From Dimorphilus gyrociliatus (Eukaryota; Animalia; Annelida), in contig CAJFCJ010000015.1 in NCBI GenBank assembly GCA_904063045.1, positions 744,001 to 808,000 of the forward strand: a DNA stretch of 64,000 bases, in the 5' to 3' direction. Shown in pieces: positions 44,109 to 58,410 of the stretch. Position 1 is the first letter of the stretch, and every line of letters begins with the position of its first letter. A program made the translations under genes and the position numbers. The notes beneath the pieces were generated by a model that was given only the letters and a program-made list of their open reading frames with translations, was not told where the DNA came from and did not search any database.

Positions 44109-47226
<3,118 letters not shown>

Positions 47227-48659
47227 AATTTAGAACATTTCGGCACGGAACTAGTAACCGATTTAAATACGAAATAGGACGAGTTCCGTCAAGCACTATA
47301 ACAGGGTAGTGAATATTCATATATTTCGAAACTAATTCCATTTACTAGCGGTATCCATATTAAAAGTTCTATTTTTTTTTACATCCGAAAGAAATACAAG
47401 AGAAGCTTGCACTCATTGAACATTTTAGAAATTTAATTTTTAATTTTGAATAAGATTACAACAAACGTAAAATTCTGAAAAGTTTCTGTCAAATAATACT
47501 TTTTTACTACATATTACAACGTTTTCACTAAACCTTGCAGATACTTAAAATAGTTAATAGTATAATCTACAGAATTTAAATACAACTCAAAAGTAATTTA
47601 GGCAAGTACAAACCTTCACTTAGAAACCATTAAAAGAGGTATGAACTTTTACGGTAGTAATACCAAGAAGAAATATAGAATAATGAATATTCATTACGCA
47701 TTTACTGAATGCTAAACCAGCTAGCTTAGAGAATTTCGTCATGGCATGAAAATCTATAGAATGTCCATGGACAATGTTTATTGTGAAATCCCCCAAACTT
47801 TTTTTTATAATCTCAAAAACAATATCTTTACTTACGCAAATATAACGCAGATAAAGCATTTAAGCAATTAAAACATGTCACTTTCCCAAGAAGATATTAG
47901 TTAGCCTATGTAGATGTAGTAGTCGAAATAGTTGTTTTCCTACGAGAGAATAGCCTAATAGAAATAATCCAATATGGAAAGATTCATCGAAAAGGGGAAA
48001 TTAATAAAAAAAAAGGGAAAGAAAAACAGAATTAAACATGTAATAGCCTGTCAATTGAAAGAGTCAGTCTGCGAAAAAAAATCATATAATACGAATTACA
48101 GTAATAATTACTTGATTAGACATGTTTATAACAAGTTGAATTTGCTATTATATTCTTTAAAAGACAATGTGATTAGTGTTTCAACATGGCTGGACATGAA
48201 AAAACTTGTTTTGATTTGATGTTTCAGCAGCAAAACTTTTGAGAACAATTTCTGACACGTTAGAACAGGAGTATTACAAGTAAAATACTGTTTTTGTCAA
48301 TAACTTTCCGTTTATATACAAGAAAAAACGTAATACGTTTATTATAACTTATTAGCATACTCTTATGATCAATGGATAGTTTTTTTATCAGTTACAGCAT
48401 AGATATGATTGTCTATTTTTTATCACCACTTGTAATAGCATAACTAATAAAAATTGAAGCAATACGCAAATGAAGAGTGAAAAGAAGCTCTTTTCCTGTG
48501 AAATGTTAGTTTGTATATACTGTATGTACAGTATGTAAGGCACGATACAACAAATAGCAAGCTATGTAAAAATTTTTTTGGAATTCGAAATAGTAAAACT
48601 AAAAAATTTACAAATTAAAGGAAAATGTTAAAAGGGAAATTAAAAATAAAATCGATAAA

Positions 48660-51057
48660 TCAATTTTGTCGAAAATCGCATATTAACTCTTCCCCAGTTT
48701 GTATATTTCTCTTGGCAAATAGTCCAATTCTTGGAAAAGTTGTATCGTATTGGTTGATGAACACTTTGGCGTAAATTAAATTGGCCTCAGAATCCCGTCT
48801 TACGAATCGTCCTATATTTGAAGCCACATCGGTTGTTAGGAATAAACTCGTTTGTTTTGATATTGAAACTGATATTTCATTTCTGCTCTCTTTTTCATAA
48901 ATACCATTAAGTTCGCAGATGAAAGAACCTTTTGGAATGAATTGACCAGATCGGAGAGACCATCTTCTGTCGCTTGTGCGAAAAACCTCCAAATTATATT
49001 GTATTCCCTTACTTAGAACCCTATTTTTACAGCGATTGTTCCAGCACGGGCAGAGTACACTGCATTCAAATATAGGTCCAGAGACTTTCGATTTAAGACG
49101 ACCATTCTCATCATAACATCCGTGTAGTTCGGAGCAAGAACAATTTTCTGAACAATCAAAGGAGCAAGAACAGAATCTATTCTGACTTACAATTTCATTA
49201 TAAACAACGCGAGAAGATCCGTAATTGCGAATTATATATTGGAAAGCGTCCACTTTCGTTTCGGCGTCGATTCCGTTAAAAGCCGGTATTGCCATTTTTT
49301 CTCTTCCATTTGACACATCTTCACTAACAATAGCTTCGAAATTTGTTCTATTATCAAACATAGACAATAGATGAATTTTATCTTTTGGTAGGAGATCGAA
49401 TGCGGTCTCTCCTTGTTGATTCTTATGTTTAACGTTTGTCCCTTCAATTCCTGCAAGGTATTCAGCAATATCGTGATGTTCCTGACGTAAAGCTATGTGA
49501 AGTGGAAGATCTCCAGCATTGTTAGGTATTCTTGGATTACAGCAGGTAGATACAAACAAATGAACCAATTTAAAAGAACCACCGTAAGCAGCCCAATGTA
49601 AAGATGTCGAACCTTCGATATCGGCGTGATTGGGGTTAGCACCCAATGACAATAGAAACTCAGCTACATTTTCACACCGGTTTTCACTGCAGTCCATAAG
49701 AGCAGTATAGCCGCAGTTGTCCTCAATATCCACGTCAATCAAATCTGTTATTAATTTTACTACCTCTAAATCATTCGACAAGGCAGCCATATGCAAAGCC
49801 GTTCGTCCATCAAGATCTAAATCACAGATGCATGCACCATAATTCAACAATTGTTTAACAATGTCAAGATTCCCAATTTTAGACGCAATGAGGAAGGGTG
49901 TACGGCATTCATCATCTCTTATACTTAACGACGCTCCTGCCCAAAGAAGAATGTCAACGGCAACTATATCACAGTTTTTCACAGCTCTCAATAGAGGAGT
50001 TAATCCTTCGCTTATTTTATCAAGATCAGCACCATTTCTTATACATTGCAAAATTCCACTAGTATCTCCATGCTTAACAGCTGCATGTAGATTATTGTAT
50101 GTCCGACTGCTGGAAAATGAATCGTTGCTAACTGAAATAGTTGCAAAAGATCTTTGTAATTTATTCCTTGCTTCATCGCTTAAAGAATATGTTTTTTTTT
50201 TAATTTTCATTTGAGCTGCTCCGTGTTTTTCAACAATTTCTCTTCGAATAGCCTCACTACAATATTTCAGTGTAAACAATTCTTCTTTCCAATTCTCAGA
50301 ATCACAATGTTCGCATTTTTTCACTTTTACACTATTAGCACATCTGACGTGTGTTAAATGCTTCTTTTCACAAACGTAAAATTTACCAAGTAAACAATGC
50401 TGACCGCATATTGTACAGCAATGGTGTTTTTTGGCAATTTCGGTATGTTTCTCACACATAACAACATAAGGTAATCGTACATGAATTCTAAATACGTTAT
50501 TAGAAAAAGCTAGTTCACAGCACATACGACTTTTCATATAAATAGAATCTGTCATTTGACATTGTTGTTTTTCTCCATCATTCTGAAGTTGTATTTGGGA
50601 ACATTTGCAAGCCGAATTGTCGGCTTCATAATCTACCGGTTGCTGTAACTGTAAAGGTATACTGGGCATGACACCGGTGTTTATTACTGAGGTAACGTCT
50701 ACTCTAGGAATTTGATCATCGCTTTCAACATTTGTGCCATTTTTTTCTATGTGCTTTAATGATGAACTGGAATGTTCAACAAAGGCATAAACTTCCGAGA
50801 CATTTTCGAGAGAAACTCTGCTCTTTCGTAGATATTTTAAAAATTCAATATCGCTTCTAGGCGATATATCAACAGTCTTTTTCGTTTGCGAGTCATCATC
50901 CATAGGTTCCTCAACCGATGAGGCTGATGGGGTTTCATCATCTGTGATAAATGATAAATCATTTGGATGAGGATTTGAATGTAAGGTCTCTGAAAGCGAC
51001 AAGATTGTATTGAGCGATAATAGGCGGTTAAGAGTATAAAATACCTGTACAACTCAT
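48660..51057 (-). CDS. EHMT2: G9a/GLP (EHMT1/2)-like protein: Cys-rich region, ankyrin repeats, pre-SET and a degenerate SET with no post-SET; 2 exons
   Basis: Exon 1 is 51057-51045 (ATG AGT TGT ACA G), intron 51044-50990, exon 2 runs to the stop at 48660. EHMT Cys-rich CEKH..HHCCTICG.HC..GKF..C, about 7 ankyrin repeats, EDVSNGREKMAIPAFN, pre-SET CSCSFDC..CSC..FECSVLCPC..CKNRV. SET motifs are substituted (see findings). Confidence 0.85.
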
Positions 51058-51203
51058 TTTTTAGAACAAAATCGACAGAGATTATAGTTCAAAGTTATAG
51101 ATTATAGTTTAATGACTAATCGTACTGTTTCACACATTTGTCGGATCATATCCTGATGATTTTAATTTGAAAATATATACAGTTTCTAGAAGAACGTGTA
51201 CAA

Positions 51204-51213
51204 TGCGCATGCG
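51204..51213. promoter_or_regulatory. NRF1-like motif TGCGCATGCG in the EHMT-like/peroxidase divergent promoter
   Basis: First 10 bases of the TGCGCATGCGCA palindrome, in a 405-bp head-to-head interval. Confidence 0.4.
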
Positions 51214-51462
51214 TAAACCACCAAATAACTAGTATTTCATAAAGTGAATATTTCATGATATAAATTAACTTTAATATTTATTTATTGTTAAAAATTTCAA
51301 AAAGGTCACATCATATCTGTAATTTCTATATTGTTCATAGTTCTTTTTATTTATGTAACCCCAGGTCTGAAAAAAAAAACAAGTACTCTAGAAATGACAC
51401 TACTCGTTAAGCAGAACTAGCTTTAGTAAGTTACAAATCTCACTCAGTGGTGTAGAGCAGTC

Positions 51463-54258
51463 ATGAGAGGGTAAATATTTAATACATTGGTTTTAATGTT
51501 CATTTTATTGAATTTAACTTTTCCCTTCCTTTTCATAATTTCAACAGATTAAACGTAGTGTTGACCGTAGCTTTGTCGATAGTCTCGGTTTTCACAAGCA
51601 AAGCTGAAGATGAAATGTTTAAAGAAGCTTTAAAGGATTGGAAAAGAAAAATTGAGAGAGATACAAAGCAGGCGTTAGGTTCAGAATATCACAATGGTTG
51701 TATCTTTCCAAATGGTATGGAATATGGTAGTTTGGTTGGGGAGTCTGGTTATCTTCTTGAGCATATTGCAAAATATAAGAAACAGTAATTGATTTAAATA
51801 CTGTATATTCGAAAAAAATAATCTACATAACTTTTTATATCTACTTTAGAAAGTATGGTCATTATTCGCGGAGAGATAGACCACTTCCACGCACCAATCA
51901 TAAATTAGAACCAGATGCCCCGTTCCTACATCCTATTCCTAATACCTGTCCTTGGCCCGAGTACAACTGTGACCCTAATAGCTTTTACAGGTAGTATATT
52001 GTATACAACATCAGATTGAACAAAATATTTAATTAATTATATTAATATTAGGAGTTTTAGCGGAGCTTGTAATAATTTGAGATATCCAATCATTGGACGG
52101 TCATTTACACCTCTTAGAAGATTTCTACCCTCAGATTTCGGCGATTGTAAGTTCAAACAGTTACCAACGAAATGTATGAAATAGCTTGTTATCTGATAAA
52201 TAATTTTATATCTAAATAGCTATTAGCTCTCTGAGGACTGGTAAAAACAATAAACCTTTGCCTTCCGCTCGACTTGTTAGTCTTACTATTCATCAACAAT
52301 CTAATGATACAAAGCATAATAAGTTTTTGACTTGCGCTATAATGAATTATGGACAATTTTTGGATCATGATTTATCTTTTACGGCTACTGCAAAAATTAC
52401 GGTAGGAGAGAAAAAGATTAATCCGGATTGTGGAGAAAGTTTTTGCGAAACAGTTTTAGAAGAATGCGAACCAATTACAATTCCAAACGATGATCCAATT
52501 TTTAAACCTTCAAGATGTTTAAAGTTTATACGTTCGCAAGAGAGTCCAAATTTGGCCTGTTCAATTGGACCAAGGGAACACGTTAATCAACTATCAAGCT
52601 ATATTGACGCGTCAAACGTTTACGGTTCGACGAAGCAGCAAGCAGATGCTTTAAGAAATTTTGATGATGATGGCACTTTAAGATCAACACCAACAACAGG
52701 TCACCACCATTTGCCAATAGGGAATCTAGATAAATCTTGCAAGAGCTTCAATAATGATAAAGAAATGTGTTTCGATGCTGGTGACGTAAGAGCTAACGAA
52801 CAGGTTTTGCTCATCAGCCATCATACATTATTTATGAGACATCATAATTATTTAGCGAAAGGATTGAAATATGTCAACCCCTCTTGGTCGGGAGAAAAAG
52901 TATTCCAAGAAGCTAGAAAGATTATGGGGGCTATTATGCAAATAGTGGCCTATGATGAATACTTACCAGCTATCTTAGGAAAAGATCATATGGCTAAATA
53001 TGAATTGAATTTGGCACCCGCAAAAGAGTATTATTATGGTTATACTTCGAAAGTTGACCCGTCGATTAGAACTGAATTTTCAACAGCTGCCTTTAGGTTT
53101 GGTCATGCTCAAATTCCAAATCACCTAACTATAAACAACACTAATATAGAATATTCAAGGGTTAGAGTTTAATTAATAACACAGACAAGCAGATACAAAC
53201 AATATTTCAATATTATTACTTGTTTTATAGCTCTTCTTTCAACCAACAAAATCTGTACATTTAGGACAAGGTAACCTTTTAAAAGCGTCTATTGAGAACG
53301 ACCTTAAGAATGCTGATAGAGTTTTTTCAAAAATAATCTCGAGTCATATGTTTACTGCTAATCCACCTTTTGGTACTGGAACTGATCTGCCGTCGTTAAA
53401 TATTCAAAGGGGTCGCGATCATGGTATACCAGGTAGGATGCGAATATTTTTTAGTTGAATCCCTATCTATAGTTTCTTTCATACGTTTGATCTTCTATAG
53501 GCTATAATGAATACAGAGATTTCTGCGGTTTGTCTAGAGCTTATTCCTTTAACGGACTTGTAGATATTCCACCGAGTATTCGTACGAAATTTTCGCAAAT
53601 TTACGAGTAAACTCCTTCTTTACATTTAAAGTCATTGCACATTTATTTTCTAATTATTCAATTTGTTTTGAAATAGCCATGTCGATGATATTGATTTATT
53701 CGCTGGAGCAATGAGCGAAGTTTTGGTAGAAGGTTCTCAAGTAGGACCAACTTTTCAGTGCATTATTGGTAGACAGTTTAAAATGCTGAGGAAAGGTGAT
53801 AGATTCTGGCACGAAAATCCAGGTCAATTTACTATGCGTAAGTAACTTTTGAAAATAAAAGCGTTCTTCACTACAATACCATATTAAGAGAATATCTATA
53901 ATTTTGTTCATATGTATCAATTATATTTTTACTATTGTAGCCCAATTAACTGCTTTGCGAAAGGTTAAATTGTCAAGTATTTTGTGCGCAAATACGAATA
54001 TTGTTGAAATTCAACCCGAAGTCTTTAAGAAACCTATTAGACAAGTCTTCCCAGATATTCAGTAAATATATATGTTTTTTGTTTATAATTTGTATTAAAT
54101 AATGCATGCAAATTTTTAGGGAGTTAATCGACTATGTCATGAGCGAAGGAAAAGAGCTATCAGAATATAAGCTACTGTGGGATTTGAACTATAACGCGGT
54201 TGTTGATTGTAACATTATTCCAGCTTTCGACTTCACACCGTGGGCAGATGGAGCTTAA
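51463..54258 (+). CDS. Secreted animal heme peroxidase (peroxidase-cyclooxygenase family, peroxidasin-like catalytic domain only), multi-exon
   Basis: Signal peptide MRGLNVVLTVALSIVSVFTSKA. YRSFSGACNNL, LPSARLVS, distal GQFLDHD, GDVRANEQ, proximal AFRFGH, NIQRGRDHG, GDRFWHEN. The heme-linking Asp and Glu are present; the MPO Met position is Gln. Confidence 0.92.
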
Positions 54259-54409: not shown

Positions 54410-57400
54410 TTACCAACATCCACGTCGGAATGGTTTTCTATATGGCCGACTGAAGTTGCGACGATTGTCGTATGGCCTTCTGATAAACTCACAGCTTCTT
54501 CCTCTAAAAGGGTTTCTAAAATTCGCATCTGGTAACAAAGGTACACTATGATTTGGCGATATATTATCGCTTTCAGCCCCCCTTGAGATTAAATGTTCGT
54601 TTGGTAAACGTGACACTTCTGATTCAGAATTTTCTGGAAACTGGAATTGTACTTCAGACTTCTGAGGAAATTGAGCAATATCAGGGCGAAAGTTTATGCG
54701 AGATCCTTGACCTGGGGGATATCTCCATGCACCTTGTTGATCTCTTTGACCTCTATTTCTTGGCCAAGATTGGTAGTGTCTGTAACAGCCTCGCTTTAGA
54801 GTGTGATCCATTGGAGTTTGTAAAGGTATACGAGTTTGATTTATTTTATTATCAGCATGGGAAGTTACAGACTCTCTTCTAAACAATTTTCGAGCCAGAT
54901 TAAGTAATTTTTGATGAGAAACATTGTCATACACAGCATTCTCAGGATTTGATGCTATTCTTATAATCAAAGATTCAATGGCTGGTCGTAAAGCAGTTAT
55001 CTTTGCAGCAACTGTAGTTTTAATTTTCACTCTAATCCAATCATCTAGTAAAACGTTTTCTTCCCCCCAAGCTTTCACTGAACGAACACATAGCAACAAT
55101 AGATGTATGGGAGTAACCATAGTCATTTGTTTGCATGATACTGCTTTTGTTCTAATCTTCTCTCCAAACACAAAAAATGGTGAGGAAGGTACCAGATCAT
55201 CTTGAACGCAGTTTACGGATGATTTATGTATGAGAGCTGATTTATTTTCGGTTGTAATTACTTGCCGTCTTTTCTTATAAACACAAACGTTGGGATAAAC
55301 AGCATAAGCCAAAAAGGCGGTAACTGTATCCAAATTTTCGTCAGGGCCATATGGATTTATATCTACTGAATTAAAACTTTCCTCGGAAAACCCGCTGTTT
55401 ATAAGAATATCAATAAGTTGTTGTTTTGCTTCAGAAGCCATTCTTAAATTTCCAATATTCAAAGATTTATATTCACAAAAAGATGACTCTTCTTGTTCCC
55501 CATTTAAGCATGCCTGATACCATAGATCGTAAGCTTTCAGTAAGGCGACATGATCACTAAATCTATCCCCCGCCATACTTCTATGTTGATTGAGTAATTT
55601 TCCTTTTCTTTGGGGTGGAATAATGAATGGCTCTGGAAAAGTGCTCATAGCTGCAATTGTGCATGCCATGTCAGTGCAAGAAAAAGCGCAACAATACATA
55701 ATCATTACTCCTAGCCGAGGTTCTATTGGCAGGCGAGCAAGTATTCGACCCAGAGGGGTTAACTCACATTTAGAATCAAGAGCCTTCAGGTTTTTTAAAA
55801 CAACTTCCGCCTCAATGACCGTATCTATCGATGGTGGTTCTACGGTTTTCGCTAGAAAAGTACCAATTGATCCTAAGCGTAATAGCTTAATACTCAAAGC
55901 AATTTCATGTAAGGGAGTTCGCAATATTTCTGGAATTGAATGCTCGTCCAAATGGAAAAATCTTGCCTTCGTGCAAAGAACAAAACACTTTCCCGGCCTA
56001 ACTCTGCCCGCTCTTCCCCGACGTTGCTCTAAACTAGTTCTAGAGGCCCATACGGTTGTATAGTTTGTCATATTATTGTGAGTTGTAAACAGTTTCCTTT
56101 TCACTTTGCAAGAATCTATTACAAAACTGACATCATCGATTGTTATTGAAGTCTCAGCAATATTCGTAGATAAAATAATTTTCGTAACACCATCATTAAC
56201 ATGCTCAAAAACTTTTCTCTGATCTTCCCTTGGTACCTGAGAATGTAATGGAAGAATAATATAATTACTGCTACCAAACGTCGCGTGTTGCTGAAGATAT
56301 TTTTGAAGCATGACTATCCAATTCCAACCAGGCAAAAAAACAAGAATAGATCCAGGTATATTTAAACTCTTGATATGTATGAGCAAAGATTCAAAGAGTT
56401 CTACGGATATCTCTCTTTCACTTAACAAGGAAACGCTCTTTCGAGTTTCTGCACTATATTCTTCTGAAACTTTTAAATTCATATTTTCCGGATCTTCACG
56501 CCCCAAAACTAAATTGTCTTCGTCATCGTCATCCTCTCCAACGGGTAAAAATGAATTTGGCCTCTTTCGTTTTTTTGTTCGAAAAGTATCAGGTGTTGGC
56601 TTGAAATTCAACATTTCCACAATATCCTCGAGGAAATATCTTGTTACTGGATGTTGGCGACCATGAACCTGAACAATTTCCACTGAGCCAAAATAATCCG
56701 TAAAAAGTGAAGTGTCAACTGTTGCCGACATTAATACGACTCGTAACTGTGGATAGGATCTAACCATATCCCTCAAGATAACTAATAAAAAATCAGTATT
56801 TAAGTCTCTTTCATGAATTTCATCAACAAATACATGAGAAATTCCTCGCATGCCATTCTCGAGCTTACGCAATAGACTTCCTATGGTGCAATATAGCATA
56901 CTTCCAAATGGCCTTGGTAATACTGATTCGAAGCGTACACTATATCCAACAGATGTACCTAAAGTTTCGCACCTTTCATAGCTAACTCTTTCAGCTATTG
57001 ATATAGCACTAATCCTTCTAGGTTGAGTTATAACAATGTTGCAAGAACAACCTTTACCCATTTTAATAAAATGTTCCAAAACATATTGAGGTATTTGAGT
57101 TGTTTTTCCAGAACCGGTTTCTCCCCTAATCAAAACAACAGAATTCTTTTCTATTTTGTCAATAATTACATCTTTTAAAGAGTGTACGGGTAGTTGTTCA
57201 CGAAATTTTTTCCTCCTGCCAAACTCCGCTTCTGTTTGCTGTTCATGAAAGTCATTTAGTAAATCCAAGCTGATTGAGTCTAAATTTTTATGGGCTAGGG
57301 GGCCTTCGTCAATATTCATTGCTTTCCAGGCATTCCAATTCCTTTGAGGGGGTGACCATTGCACAGTTCCGTTAGAGAAAGGTTCATCTACTTCTTCGAA

Positions 57401-58410
57401 TGAATCTACAACTACATCACTTATCAATTGCGACGGAGTATCTTCAGAGAGTCCAACATCTTGAGGTGTTATATTAAACGAAGAAAGAACCTCGTCGATC
57501 TCAGCTTCTAATTCTTCTGATATTTTCATTTCGTACGGTAGAATTTCCATTGTCGTACATTTCTTCTTCTCACCATCATATTGTTCAATAATACCGAAAT
57601 GAAATAGTTGACGCACAAGAGACAGAGCGCAATTTTTCGAAGCTATTTGCTTGTTAGAGCCATGCTCTCTTCCAATAAGGCTTCTTCCCAATTTACTTAT
57701 GTAAATCTTCATTTCAGCTATAAAACTCCTGTGTTAAAATAAAATTATGATTGTTCTTTTTTTCGAACGTTTTTCTAGAGGAACGTCAACATACAGCACA
57801 TATATTGGACAACATTTTTTATATACCTATTATGATCTGGCCCCAGAGTTGAGTACTGATAATCAGCTTTAATGTGATTTTTTTGAAAATATTCATTTAA
57901 TCTCGATTTAGCATTATCCATTGTCCAGTTACCGTGAATTGCAGCCGTTAAGTCAACTTCTTCATTGGCTTCAACGTTCTTTTTATTTTGTAAAGCCATT
58001 AAATAACTAGACGGTACATCAGTCTTTTCACTATTTAAATTACTTAAATTACAATCGGTAGATTCCGCTGATCGAGAAGAATGGGGGTTTTGTGAATCGA
58101 TTTGGAGAGCTCCATTTGAAGAGTGTGCAGAATTGGTACTTCTATTTGGCCTGGCTATTGAAGATACTTCAATTTCCGAAATTTCGCTTAAACGTACAAG
58201 AAAATTAATAAAATCATCCGCTGCATTACTTTGAGCATCTTTTTTATTCGTAGAATTCCCAATTCCAATATAATCATAACCTTGAACTTTTAATTCGCAA
58301 GTAAAACGCTGTCTATGCTTACTACCGGATGCTCTATACTGATACTGAGGGCTTAACTTCTTCTTCTGCATAAGCCATGTATGCAAAAATTGCTTGACGT
58401 TTTCTCCCAT
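54410..58410 (-). CDS. DHX9: RNA helicase A / DHX9 (two dsRBDs plus DExH helicase), 2 exons
   Basis: dsRBD1 [24 protein letters not shown]; dsRBD2 joined across one intron (PDHNR|[28 protein letters not shown]). [29 protein letters not shown]. Confidence 0.95.

What the first reader, a model, noticed from the sequence alone, without database searches (positions are those of the whole stretch)
48660..49035. G9a/GLP homologue with a dismantled SET active site and no post-SET: a candidate pseudo-methyltransferase
Seen, in a colinear alignment with the G9a SET: GWG becomes RWS (48957-48965; SAM-binding motif). FICEY becomes FICEL (48909-48911; the Y1067-equivalent). RFINH becomes RFVRR (48795-48800; the invariant Asn-His). 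ELGFDY becomes ELICDF (48672-48674; the catalytic Y1154-equivalent). The stop comes 3 residues later, removing the post-SET CxC-x4-C zinc site. The ORF, Cys-rich region, ankyrins and pre-SET cysteines are otherwise intact. Established: these residues are needed for SAM binding and methyl transfer in SUV39/EHMT enzymes; G9a and GLP work as a heterodimer and also have scaffold roles. Inference: a maintained but catalytically dead EHMT. It is either the partner or regulator of an active paralogue, or the sole copy, which would imply euchromatic H3K9me1/2 is lost or rerouted in this animal.
Basis: partly seen in the sequence, partly recalled or inferred. Interest (0 to 1): 0.8.

Follow-up and report, generated by a model that had tools for sequence, protein, structure and literature searches.

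The report
Conserved catalytically dead G9a/GLP paralogue
The miniature annelid Dimorphilus gyrociliatus keeps, expresses and strongly conserves a second G9a/GLP-type gene whose methyltransferase domain has lost its cofactor-binding and catalytic residues, next to a normal-looking copy, so it is a natural test case for what these chromatin proteins do without enzyme activity.

Summary
The window is Dimorphilus gyrociliatus and the gene is DgyrCDS10345. It has two exons and encodes 780 aa with the full EHMT architecture: Cys-rich region, ankyrins, pre-SET and SET. Aligned to human G9a, GWG is RWS, the Y1067-equivalent is Leu, Asn-His is Arg-Arg, the NHxC cysteine is Ser and the Y1154-equivalent is Phe. 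The ORF stops three residues later, and no post-SET lies downstream in any frame.

It is not a pseudogene. A sister lineage keeps an 80%-identical orthologue with the same lesions and the same stop position. Synonymous sites there are saturated, and dN/dS is about 0.03 in SET and ankyrins. A spliced RNA contig covers the whole ORF.

It is not the sole copy. DgyrCDS5107 carries an intact GWG, FICEY, RFINH, ELSYDY and post-SET, and the sister lineage has that copy too. A 2025 paper reports two ehmt genes and no SUV39 in this animal, but says nothing about an inactive copy.

Best reading: a maintained non-catalytic EHMT, probably a partner or scaffold of the active copy. Loss of activity and partnering are both untested.

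The parts
51045..51245 (-). Exon 1: 5' UTR plus the first 13 coding bases (ATG at 51057-51055; ATGAGTTGTACAG), with an in-frame TAA two codons upstream
   Evidence: RNA contig X3 joins 51045 to 50989; sequence read
50990..51044 (-). 55-nt GT..AG intron. The annotated model DgyrCDS10345 instead uses an acceptor 48 nt further on, at 50941.
   Evidence: Joint 'skips 55, CT..AC' in X3; P0001 versus window ORF alignment; sequence
48660..50989 (-). Exon 2: the rest of the CDS, with the stop TGA at 48660-48662; total protein 780 aa
50301..50561 (-). EHMT1/2 Cys-rich region (residues 148-234)
   Evidence: Pfam PF21533, E 1.5e-13; 82% identical to the sister orthologue, dN/dS 0.05
49368..50105 (-). Ankyrin repeat domain (residues about 300-545). 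It is the most conserved domain of this protein.
   Evidence: Pfam Ank_2, E 5.5e-49; 90% identity, dN/dS 0.028; 21 synonymous versus 5 non-synonymous differences in a third lineage, X2
49683..49709 (-). Degenerate methyl-lysine cage: Y432...D437..E440, where other EHMTs have W....W..E. The later LHW470AA (49593-49595) is kept.
   Evidence: Alignment of 51 EHMT ankyrin domains; cage residues as in G9a W791/W796/E799 (PMC4335294)
49020..49313 (-). Pre-SET (residues 564-661) with all nine Zn3Cys9 cysteines
   Evidence: Pfam PF05033, E 7.8e-15; cysteine inventory; invariant Cys columns in A2
48672..48962 (-). Degenerate SET domain (residues 681-777)
   Evidence: Pfam SET at only 34.6 bits, against 92-96 bits in active EHMTs; AF2 model matches the G9a/GLP SET at TM 0.82
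48957..48965 (-). RWS in place of GWG (SAM-binding loop)
48909..48911 (-). Leu698 in place of the G9a Y1067-equivalent tyrosine
48789..48800 (-). RRDS in place of NHxC: the SAM-binding Asn, the His and the zinc-ligand Cys are all lost
   Evidence: G9a N1112S abolishes SAM binding (PMC13462943)
48672..48674 (-). Phe777 in place of the catalytic Tyr (G9a Y1154)
   Evidence: Y1154 is essential (PMC8541646)
48660..48662 (-). Stop codon three residues after ...CDF, so there is no post-SET. The position is conserved in the sister lineage (TAA there).

Best explanation
This is EHMT-b, a lineage-restricted paralogue of the G9a/GLP (KMT1C/D) histone H3K9 methyltransferase in Dimorphilus gyrociliatus. 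It has become a pseudo-methyltransferase.

Shown from sequence: it keeps the EHMT fold and domain order (Cys-rich region, ankyrins, a pre-SET with nine cysteines, and the SET core). It has lost the SAM-loop glycines, the Asn-His pair, both active-site tyrosines, all four post-SET zinc ligands and the whole post-SET segment that closes the lysine channel. The gene is expressed and evolves under strong purifying selection. A canonical paralogue that looks active, EHMT-a (DgyrCDS5107), sits elsewhere in the genome, and a sister lineage has both copies.

Strong inference: EHMT-b cannot bind SAM or transfer methyl groups.

Most likely mechanism (weaker inference): it is a non-catalytic subunit that pairs with EHMT-a through its SET and pre-SET domains, as mammalian G9a and GLP dimerise through their SET domains. 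It would contribute its own Cys-rich and ankyrin binding surfaces to target, stabilise or tune the active enzyme. In that case labour is fully divided between a writer and a scaffold. The altered ankyrin cage, in the domain now under the tightest constraint, suggests that its binding partner differs from the usual H3K9me1/2.

My confidence is about 0.85 that it is a maintained non-catalytic EHMT, and about 0.4 that it works specifically as the EHMT-a partner. The single figure given for this field (0.55) is a blend of the two.
For: - Identity and architecture: 100% match to DgyrCDS10345; Pfam CRR, Ank, Pre-SET and SET; best PDB sequence and fold matches are the G9a/GLP SET.
- Lesions. No downstream post-SET in either species.
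- Experimental weight of these residues: G9a N1112S fails to bind SAM and is inactive, yet still forms stable dimers (PMC13462943). Y1154 is essential, Y1067 contacts the lysine, and the fourth zinc with the post-SET forms the channel (PMC8541646).
- Selection: the sister-lineage orthologue P0002 is 80% identical with identical lesions and stop. Nei-Gojobori dN/dS is 0.026 for SET and 0.028 for ANK, with pS about 0.72. In a third lineage the differences are 21 synonymous to 5 non-synonymous.
- Expression: spliced RNA contig X3 spans the ORF, and coral metatranscriptome contigs cover the SET region.
- Active paralogue in both species. PMC12153100 reports two ehmt genes.
- Shift of constraint between the same two species: EHMT-a is 85% identical in ANK and 97.5% in SET, while EHMT-b is 91.5% in ANK and 87.7% in SET.
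- G9a and GLP dimerise through their SET domains (PMC8541646).
Against: - No biochemical test exists.
- SUVH9, long thought inactive, was later reported to need its catalytic domain for H3K9me2 in embryos (PMC8168562 abstract), so 'dead by sequence' can mislead.
- Synonymous sites are saturated, so the dN/dS values are only rough.
- The RNA evidence consists of assembled contigs, which cannot show the 3' end or rare isoforms.
- Heterodimerisation with EHMT-a is purely by analogy. I tested no interface residues and ran no complex model.
- The region matching the G9a substrate-binding i-SET is modelled at low confidence (pLDDT about 39).
- The tree joins EHMT-a and EHMT-b only through two long branches, so the origin of the duplication is unresolved.
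Confidence: 0.55

Rival explanations
1. EHMT-b is a stand-alone non-catalytic chromatin adaptor or reader. It acts independently of EHMT-a, using its Cys-rich region and a re-specified ankyrin pocket to bind histones or other proteins. The SET and pre-SET are kept only as a structural module or a homodimerisation module.
For: - The ankyrin domain is the most constrained part, at 91.5% identity against 85% in the active paralogue.
- Its cage has changed to Y/D/E/W, and the change is conserved in both species.
- G9a and GLP have catalysis-independent structural roles in mammals (PMC2887955).
Against: The dead SET and pre-SET are still under strong constraint (dN/dS about 0.03, all nine zinc cysteines kept). 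That is easier to explain if the module still makes a specific contact such as SET-SET dimerisation. There is no direct evidence either way.
Confidence: 0.3
2. EHMT-b is a natural dominant-negative inhibitor. It dimerises with EHMT-a and lowers or restricts its output, for example holding it at H3K9me1.
For: - Human catalytically inactive G9a variants form stable dimers and act in a dominant-negative way on GLP/G9a (PMC13462943).
- EHMT-b lacks both a working SET and a canonical cage.
Against: The case rests on analogy alone. This is a sub-case of the partner model and cannot be told apart from it in silico.
Confidence: 0.15
3. EHMT-b is still an active methyltransferase with an unconventional active site or a different substrate.
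For: The SET fold is retained (TM 0.82 to G9a) and is under purifying selection. The SUVH9 precedent also argues for caution.
Against: Five independent lesions hit the SAM loop, Asn-His, both tyrosines and the entire post-SET zinc site and channel wall. The single substitution N1112S already abolishes SAM binding in G9a. The active paralogue keeps every motif.
Confidence: 0.05
4. The finding is an artefact or a decaying gene: a young pseudogene, a sequencing error, or a mis-called 3' end with a missing exon that restores the domain.
For: Assembled contigs cannot exclude rare isoforms.
Against: - The intact 780-codon ORF, the lesions and the stop position are identical in independently sequenced samples of a sister lineage whose synonymous sites are saturated.
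- A spliced RNA contig runs straight through the stop with no splice out of the SET region.
- No post-SET-like coding potential lies downstream.
- An alternative last exon could not repair the internal RWS, L698 and RR lesions.
Confidence: 0.03

Closest known systems
Mammalian G9a (EHMT2) / GLP (EHMT1) heterodimer
   Same: It has the same domain order (Cys-rich region, ankyrin repeats, pre-SET, SET), and G9a/GLP are its best sequence and fold matches. There are two paralogues in one genome. The mammalian pair dimerises through SET domains and has catalysis-independent roles (PMC8541646, PMC2887955).
   Different: Both mammalian subunits are active enzymes with a post-SET and a W/W/E ankyrin cage. 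EHMT-b has lost the SAM and catalytic residues and the post-SET, and its cage is Y/D/E. The annelid duplication is reported as specific to D. gyrociliatus among three annelids (PMC12153100), so it is independent of the vertebrate G9a/GLP split.
Plant SUVH2 / SUVH9 (SUV39-family proteins without post-SET, regarded as inactive; PDB 4NJ5)
   Same: These are SUV39-superfamily pre-SET and SET domains that lack a post-SET. Plant SRA-SET representatives in my hit list show strikingly similar lesions: R/KW-, RFIRH, T-C/V-DF. SUVH9 is also a PDB sequence hit.
   Different: The plant proteins carry an SRA domain and act in RNA-directed DNA methylation. EHMT-b has no SRA but has the EHMT Cys-rich region and ankyrins, and it lives in an animal with negligible 5mC (PMC12153100). 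The resemblance is convergence, not membership.
Non-catalytic partner subunits of methyltransferases (DNMT3L with DNMT3A, METTL14 with METTL3); the likely dead PRMT6 paralogues of D. gyrociliatus
   Same: In each case a degenerate paralogue is kept under selection alongside an active enzyme. PMC12153100 already describes likely catalytically dead PRMT6 copies in this same compact genome.
   Different: These belong to different enzyme folds and families. The partner role of DNMT3L and METTL14 comes from my own knowledge and was not checked here. No partner role has been shown for EHMT-b.
Human pathogenic G9a variants (N1112S, F1158L, K1162R, del1163-4)
   Same: These single lesions fall in the same SAM-binding Asn and in the segment after Y1154 that EHMT-b lacks. 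They give stable, dimer-forming, inactive proteins (PMC13462943).
   Different: They are disease alleles with dominant-negative effect, not an evolved and conserved gene.

Membership tests
EHMT (G9a/GLP, KMT1C/D) family | Domain architecture: EHMT Cys-rich region, ankyrin repeats, pre-SET, SET | tested here: met
   Pfam PF21533, PF12796, PF05033 and PF00856, all above their cut-offs
EHMT (G9a/GLP, KMT1C/D) family | The SET region is closest in sequence and fold to G9a/GLP rather than to SUV39, SETDB or SETMAR | tested here: met
   PDB phmmer gives G9a/GLP at 3e-40, against SETMAR at 2e-24 and SUV39H2 at 2e-21. The top 50 Foldseek hits are all G9a/GLP, TM 0.78-0.82.
EHMT (G9a/GLP, KMT1C/D) family | Pre-SET Zn3Cys9 cluster | tested here: met
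   All nine cysteines are present in both species
EHMT (G9a/GLP, KMT1C/D) family | Catalytic SET motifs: GWG, the Y1067-equivalent, RFINH, and ELxFDY with the Y1154-equivalent | tested here: not met
   The motifs read RWS, L698, RFVRR and ICDF
EHMT (G9a/GLP, KMT1C/D) family | Post-SET CxCx4C zinc site together with the NHxC cysteine | tested here: not met
   The ORF stops 3 residues after DF, the NHxC Cys is Ser, and no motif is found downstream
EHMT (G9a/GLP, KMT1C/D) family | Ankyrin aromatic cage W-x4-W-x2-E that reads H3K9me1/2 | tested here: not met
   The cage is Y432-x4-D437-x2-E440. 47 of 48 other EHMTs aligned have W..W, and the active D. gyrociliatus copy has F..Y.
EHMT (G9a/GLP, KMT1C/D) family | H3K9 mono- and dimethyltransferase activity; SET-mediated homo- or heterodimerisation | not testable with these tools
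   Needs recombinant protein assays, or co-IP or a complex model
Pseudoenzyme (pseudo-methyltransferase) | Fold homologous to an active enzyme, with cofactor and catalytic residues lost | tested here: met
Pseudoenzyme (pseudo-methyltransferase) | The gene is maintained: intact ORF, purifying selection, expression | tested here: met
   Orthologue with the same lesions; dN/dS about 0.03; 21 synonymous to 5 non-synonymous differences; spliced RNA contig
Pseudoenzyme (pseudo-methyltransferase) | Demonstrated lack of catalytic activity | not testable with these tools
   Requires SAM-binding and methyltransferase assays
Processed or decaying pseudogene | Frame disruptions, neutral evolution (dN/dS near 1), no transcription | tested here: not met
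SUVH2/SUVH9-type inactive SUV39 proteins | An SRA (YDG) domain N-terminal to the pre-SET and SET | tested here: not met
   No SRA hit; the CRR and ankyrins stand there instead

The most novel reading that the evidence does not exclude
A dinophilid annelid lineage independently re-invented a G9a/GLP-like two-subunit system and took it to the extreme. One paralogue (EHMT-a) keeps all catalysis. The other (EHMT-b) is an obligate non-catalytic subunit whose re-specified ankyrin pocket (Y/D/E/W) reads a ligand other than H3K9me1/2. That would redirect euchromatic H3K9 methylation in an animal that lacks SUV39, DNMT3 and measurable 5mC.
Probability: 0.25. Interest if true: 0.7.

Novelty: new variant of a known kind. 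Interest (0 to 1): 0.55.

Why it matters
G9a and GLP have long-debated functions that do not depend on catalysis, such as scaffolding, recruitment of other silencing factors and stabilising each other. In mammals these can only be studied with engineered point mutants.

Evolution has made such a mutant here and kept it under strong selection beside an active copy. The host is a small, culturable animal with a compact genome, no SUV39 orthologue and negligible DNA methylation (PMC12153100).

This gives a direct handle on three questions. What is the EHMT scaffold selected for? Is the SET domain kept as a dimerisation module? What does an ankyrin domain with a changed cage bind?

It also corrects how the published 'duplication of KMT1C/D' in this species should be read: it is one writer plus one pseudoenzyme, not two writers. 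Gene-count inventories of chromatin modifiers should therefore check active sites, as that paper did for PRMT6.

Tried and rejected
- The word-index protein search with the whole protein returned only self, the sister orthologue and unrelated ankyrin proteins. With the SET region alone it returned 3 hits, because the domain shares too few exact words with canonical EHMTs. I therefore used the exhaustive HMMER search.
- Two rounds of cluster look-ups, on short or AT-biased hits and on the hits most identical to the query, found no D. gyrociliatus paralogue. An amino-acid composition filter did not discriminate.
- The paralogue turned up only after I selected EHMT-architecture hits with Tyr at the Phe/Tyr switch.
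- P0132 and P0200 were considered as candidate paralogues and rejected. They come from unrelated samples. P0200 is a canonical EHMT whose contig diverges after DSYLFDLD, probably because of an isoform or an assembly problem.
- The supplements of PMC12153100 held as text contain no ehmt gene identifiers.
- The phylogeny meant to date the duplication joins the two D. gyrociliatus paralogues (SH-aLRT 96). The tool flags this as two long branches meeting, so I do not rely on it.
- The read-laying runs are all assembled contigs. They show presence and splicing but not the poly(A) site or expression level.
- I considered a complex model of the EHMT-a and EHMT-b SET domains and did not attempt it. 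The structure tool takes single natural chains only.
- Following the operators' rule, I did not build or search the spliced protein (exon 1 codons joined to exon 2). All searches used the exon-2 ORF by reference. Its first four residues, MSLS, are read from intron sequence; the RNA-supported start is MSCT.
Full report
**What is there**

The window comes from the miniature annelid Dimorphilus gyrociliatus. The translated ORF matches NCBI protein DgyrCDS10345 at 100% identity.

The gene lies on the minus strand. A spliced RNA contig (run X3) joins 51045 to 50989 across a 55-nt GT..AG intron. Reading the sequence gives a start codon at 51057-51055, preceded by an in-frame TAA. There are four codons (MSCT) in exon 1, and the rest of the CDS lies in exon 2 down to the TGA at 48660-48662. 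The protein is 780 aa. The database model (764 aa) uses an acceptor 48 nt further downstream, which is also in frame.

Pfam finds the complete EHMT architecture:
- the EHMT1/2 Cys-rich region (residues 148-234);
- ankyrin repeats (about 300-545);
- Pre-SET (564-661);
- a weakly scoring SET (681-777), at 34.6 bits against 92-96 bits for the active EHMTs scanned.

**Check of the observation**

A phmmer alignment of residues 530-780 against all PDB chains puts human G9a and GLP SET domains on top (E about 3e-40), far ahead of SETMAR, SUVH4 and SUV39H2. The alignment is colinear.

| Canonical motif | Here | Coordinates |
|---|---|---|
| GWG | RWS | 48957-48965 |
| FICEY | FICEL (L698) | 48909-48911 |
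| RFINH | RFVRR | 48795-48800 |
| ELGFDY | ELICDF (F777) | 48672-48674 |

RQN and the stop follow. I recomputed all coordinates from the frame, and they are right.

Two further lesions belong to the picture.
- The cysteine of NHxC is serine (S738). With the missing CxCx4C, all four ligands of the post-SET zinc are therefore absent.
- The ankyrin methyl-lysine cage, W-x4-W-x2-E in 47 of 48 other EHMTs aligned, is Y432-x4-D437-x2-E440. The cage residues are those mutated in the binding-dead G9a W791A/W796A/E799A mutant (PMC4335294).

The nine pre-SET cysteines are all there.

No CxCx3-6C motif and no long open stretch exist in any minus-strand frame for 1.4 kb downstream. An alternative last exon could not repair the internal lesions anyway.

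An exhaustive HMMER search of 1.84 billion representatives and a motif table of the 149 nearest proteins give these counts:
- GWG in 115;
- CEY in 115;
- an NH motif in 128.

Among proteins with EHMT architecture, none but this one and its orthologue carries all five lesions.

**Not a pseudogene, not an error**

Logan assemblies of three runs (SRR23372228, SRR23372229, SRR23372216) from a related but unnamed lineage contain an orthologue, P0002. It is 80% identical overall, sits in the same gene order (followed by the KAT2/PCAF gene), and has the same RWS, FICEL, RFIRR and ELICDFRQN-stop. Its stop codon is TAA at the same position, and the flanks beyond it no longer resemble each other by eye.

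Synonymous sites between the two are saturated (pS about 0.72-0.86), while pN is 0.06-0.07 in the ankyrin, pre-SET and SET domains. Nei-Gojobori dN/dS is 0.026 for SET, 0.028 for ANK, 0.049 for the Cys-rich region and 0.25 for the N-terminus. Because of the saturation these are rough values, but the direction is not in doubt.

A third, closer lineage seen in a marine metatranscriptome (X2) differs at 21 synonymous and 5 non-synonymous sites.

The X3 contig is spliced at canonical sites on the gene's strand and covers the entire ORF without any splice leaving the SET region. Contigs from a coral metatranscriptome cover 48708-49122 and 49290-49856. These are contigs, so they show presence and splicing. 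They do not show the poly(A) site or expression levels.

**Not the sole copy**

An earlier first-stage note of this scan (s1-083756) mentioned a G9a/GLP orthologue elsewhere in this genome with Tyr at the Phe/Tyr switch. I tested this. Among EHMT-architecture hits with a Tyr at that position, P0165 belongs to the same 90% cluster as DgyrCDS5107 of D. gyrociliatus.

DgyrCDS5107 is a 1992-aa model whose N-terminal 1,100 residues are a tectonic-like protein, so it is probably a merged gene model. Its C-terminal 720 residues are a complete EHMT: CRR 1291-1382, ankyrins, Pre-SET and SET at 91.6 bits. It has KGWGVRA, FICEY, RFINHSC, ELSYDY and a post-SET, KCACGTESC. It shares only 29% identity with EHMT-b over 713 residues.

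P0165 comes from the same three Logan samples as P0002, so the sister lineage also has both paralogues. Duplication and SET degeneration therefore predate that split.

The literature agrees. PMC12153100 (Genome Biol 2025) states that D. gyrociliatus carries two kmt1c/d (ehmt2/1) genes, has a setdb1/2 orthologue, has no assignable suv39h1/2, lacks DNMT3 and has negligible 5mC. That paper discusses likely dead PRMT6 paralogues but says nothing about an inactive EHMT.

**How constraint is distributed**

Identity between the same two species:

| Paralogue | Ankyrins | Pre-SET | SET |
|---|---|---|---|
| EHMT-a (active) | 85% | 97.5% | 97.5% |
| EHMT-b (dead) | 91.5% | 85.7% | 87.7% |

The dead SET evolves about five times faster in protein sequence than the live one, but it is still tightly held. 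The ankyrin domain has become the most constrained part.

In a maximum-likelihood tree of 51 EHMTs, the stem leading to the EHMT-b pair is 2.46 substitutions per site, against a median tip length of 0.41 and only 0.07 since the species split. This suggests a burst of change followed by stasis. The tree joins EHMT-b to EHMT-a, but the tool flags this as two long branches meeting, so I do not use it to date the duplication.

**Structure**

An AlphaFold2 model of residues 552-780 with a 38-sequence alignment has mean pLDDT 74 and pTM 0.78. Its best PDB matches are all G9a/GLP SET domains (TM 0.78-0.82, about 35% identity). The fold is predicted to be retained.

Residues 150-172 of the model (ORF residues about 701-723) correspond to the i-SET segment that carries the H3-binding DSYLFDLD strand in G9a. 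They are divergent and modelled at pLDDT about 39.

**Why the lesions should kill activity**

- In human G9a the single change N1112S abolishes SAM binding and activity while leaving a stable dimer.
- F1158L, K1162R and del1163-4 lie in the segment just after Y1154 that EHMT-b lacks entirely. They reduce H3 peptide binding and abolish activity (PMC13462943).
- Y1154 is essential for catalysis, and Y1067 hydrogen-bonds the target lysine.
- The fourth zinc lies next to the SAM site, and the post-SET supplies the aromatic wall of the lysine channel (PMC8541646).

EHMT-b combines all of these defects. I rate residual methyltransferase activity at about 5%. The caution comes from plant SUVH9, long called inactive, whose catalytic domain was later reported to matter for H3K9me2 in embryos (PMC8168562 abstract).

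**Mechanism**

Shown: EHMT-b is an expressed, conserved EHMT paralogue with a retained fold, lost catalytic and cofactor residues, lost post-SET and an altered reader cage, coexisting with an intact paralogue.

Inferred: it is non-catalytic.

Most likely, by analogy:
- Inactive G9a still dimerises (PMC13462943).
- The continued constraint on a dead SET and pre-SET with an intact Zn3Cys9 cluster is most simply explained by a conserved protein contact.

I therefore favour EHMT-b as a non-catalytic subunit of EHMT-a that brings its own Cys-rich and ankyrin surfaces (about 0.4). Alternatives are an independent adaptor or reader (about 0.3) and a built-in dominant-negative regulator (about 0.15, a sub-case of the partner model). 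None of these can be separated with the tools at hand.

**Comparison and novelty**

By descent and architecture EHMT-b is a member of the EHMT family. It fails the family's enzymatic hallmarks: catalytic motifs, post-SET and ankyrin cage.

Functionally its nearest analogues are the plant SUVH2/SUVH9 proteins, SUV39-family SET domains without a post-SET. Plant SRA-SET representatives in my hit list show convergent lesions: R/K-W-x, RFIRH, T-C/V-DF and no post-SET. EHMT-b has no SRA domain, and it sits in an animal with almost no DNA methylation.

Dead partner paralogues are a known theme in methyltransferases. A dead member of the G9a/GLP family was not found in the literature searched. I class it as a new variant of a known kind.

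**Limits**

- There is no biochemistry.
- Synonymous sites are saturated.
- The RNA evidence is contig-level.
- The sister lineage is unnamed.
- The timing of the duplication is unresolved.
- No test of heterodimerisation was possible.
All protein queries used the exon-2 ORF by reference.

Noticed in passing
window 44621-47836 (minus strand): The KAT2 (GCN5/PCAF) histone acetyltransferase gene lies directly downstream of the dead EHMT on the same strand (PCAF_N from ORF 46954-47226, GNAT domain 44624-45373). RNA contig X3 runs unbroken from the EHMT ORF through the intergenic stretch, splices out 47754-47835 and continues into KAT2. This means either overlapping UTRs or read-through transcription. 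The gene order is kept in the sister lineage (L001, L002). PMC12153100 lists both kat2a/b and an ehmt gene among the modifiers shifted to early expression in this species.
   Followed up: partly
window 50941-51057: The annotated model DgyrCDS10345 (764 aa) uses a splice acceptor at 50941. The RNA contig X3 uses 50989, which adds 16 in-frame residues (ETLHSNPHPNDLSFIT). This is either an alternative 3' splice site or an annotation error.
   Followed up: partly
P0299 (DgyrCDS5107), another scaffold of the same genome: The annotated 1992-aa protein fuses a tectonic-like N-terminal part (DUF1619 domains, residues about 427-1044) to the active EHMT (residues about 1270-1992). It is probably two genes merged in the annotation. 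Its ankyrin cage is F..Y..E rather than W..W..E, and it has Tyr at the Phe/Tyr product-specificity switch (ELSYDY).
   Followed up: partly
P0256 (Plectus sambesii, UniRef A0A914WYS3, 427 aa): This nematode SUV39-family protein has a similarly degenerate SET (RWA, SEI, NFVRH, TVDF, no post-SET). It is possibly another animal pseudo-methyltransferase of this superfamily.
   Followed up: no
window 50800-50870 (residues 45-67 of the ORF): A short block, DISPRxDIEFLKYLRKSxVSL, is invariant between the two lineages inside an N-terminus that is otherwise only 50% identical. It could be a short linear motif. The LRKS core faintly recalls the ARKS/ARKT sites that G9a methylates, but I did not test this.
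   Followed up: no
window 54410-57712 (minus) and 52258-53172 (plus): The neighbouring genes are a 1100-aa single-ORF DEAH/RHA-type helicase (DEAD, Helicase_C, HA2, OB_NTP_bind) and an animal haem peroxidase exon. Both look ordinary.
   Followed up: partly
L005 (P0200, Logan SRR27258115): This EHMT transcript contig from an unidentified organism is canonical up to DSYLFDLD and then diverges, losing the NH and FDY motifs. It is probably an unspliced or alternative isoform, or an assembly artefact, and is not related to EHMT-b.
   Followed up: partly
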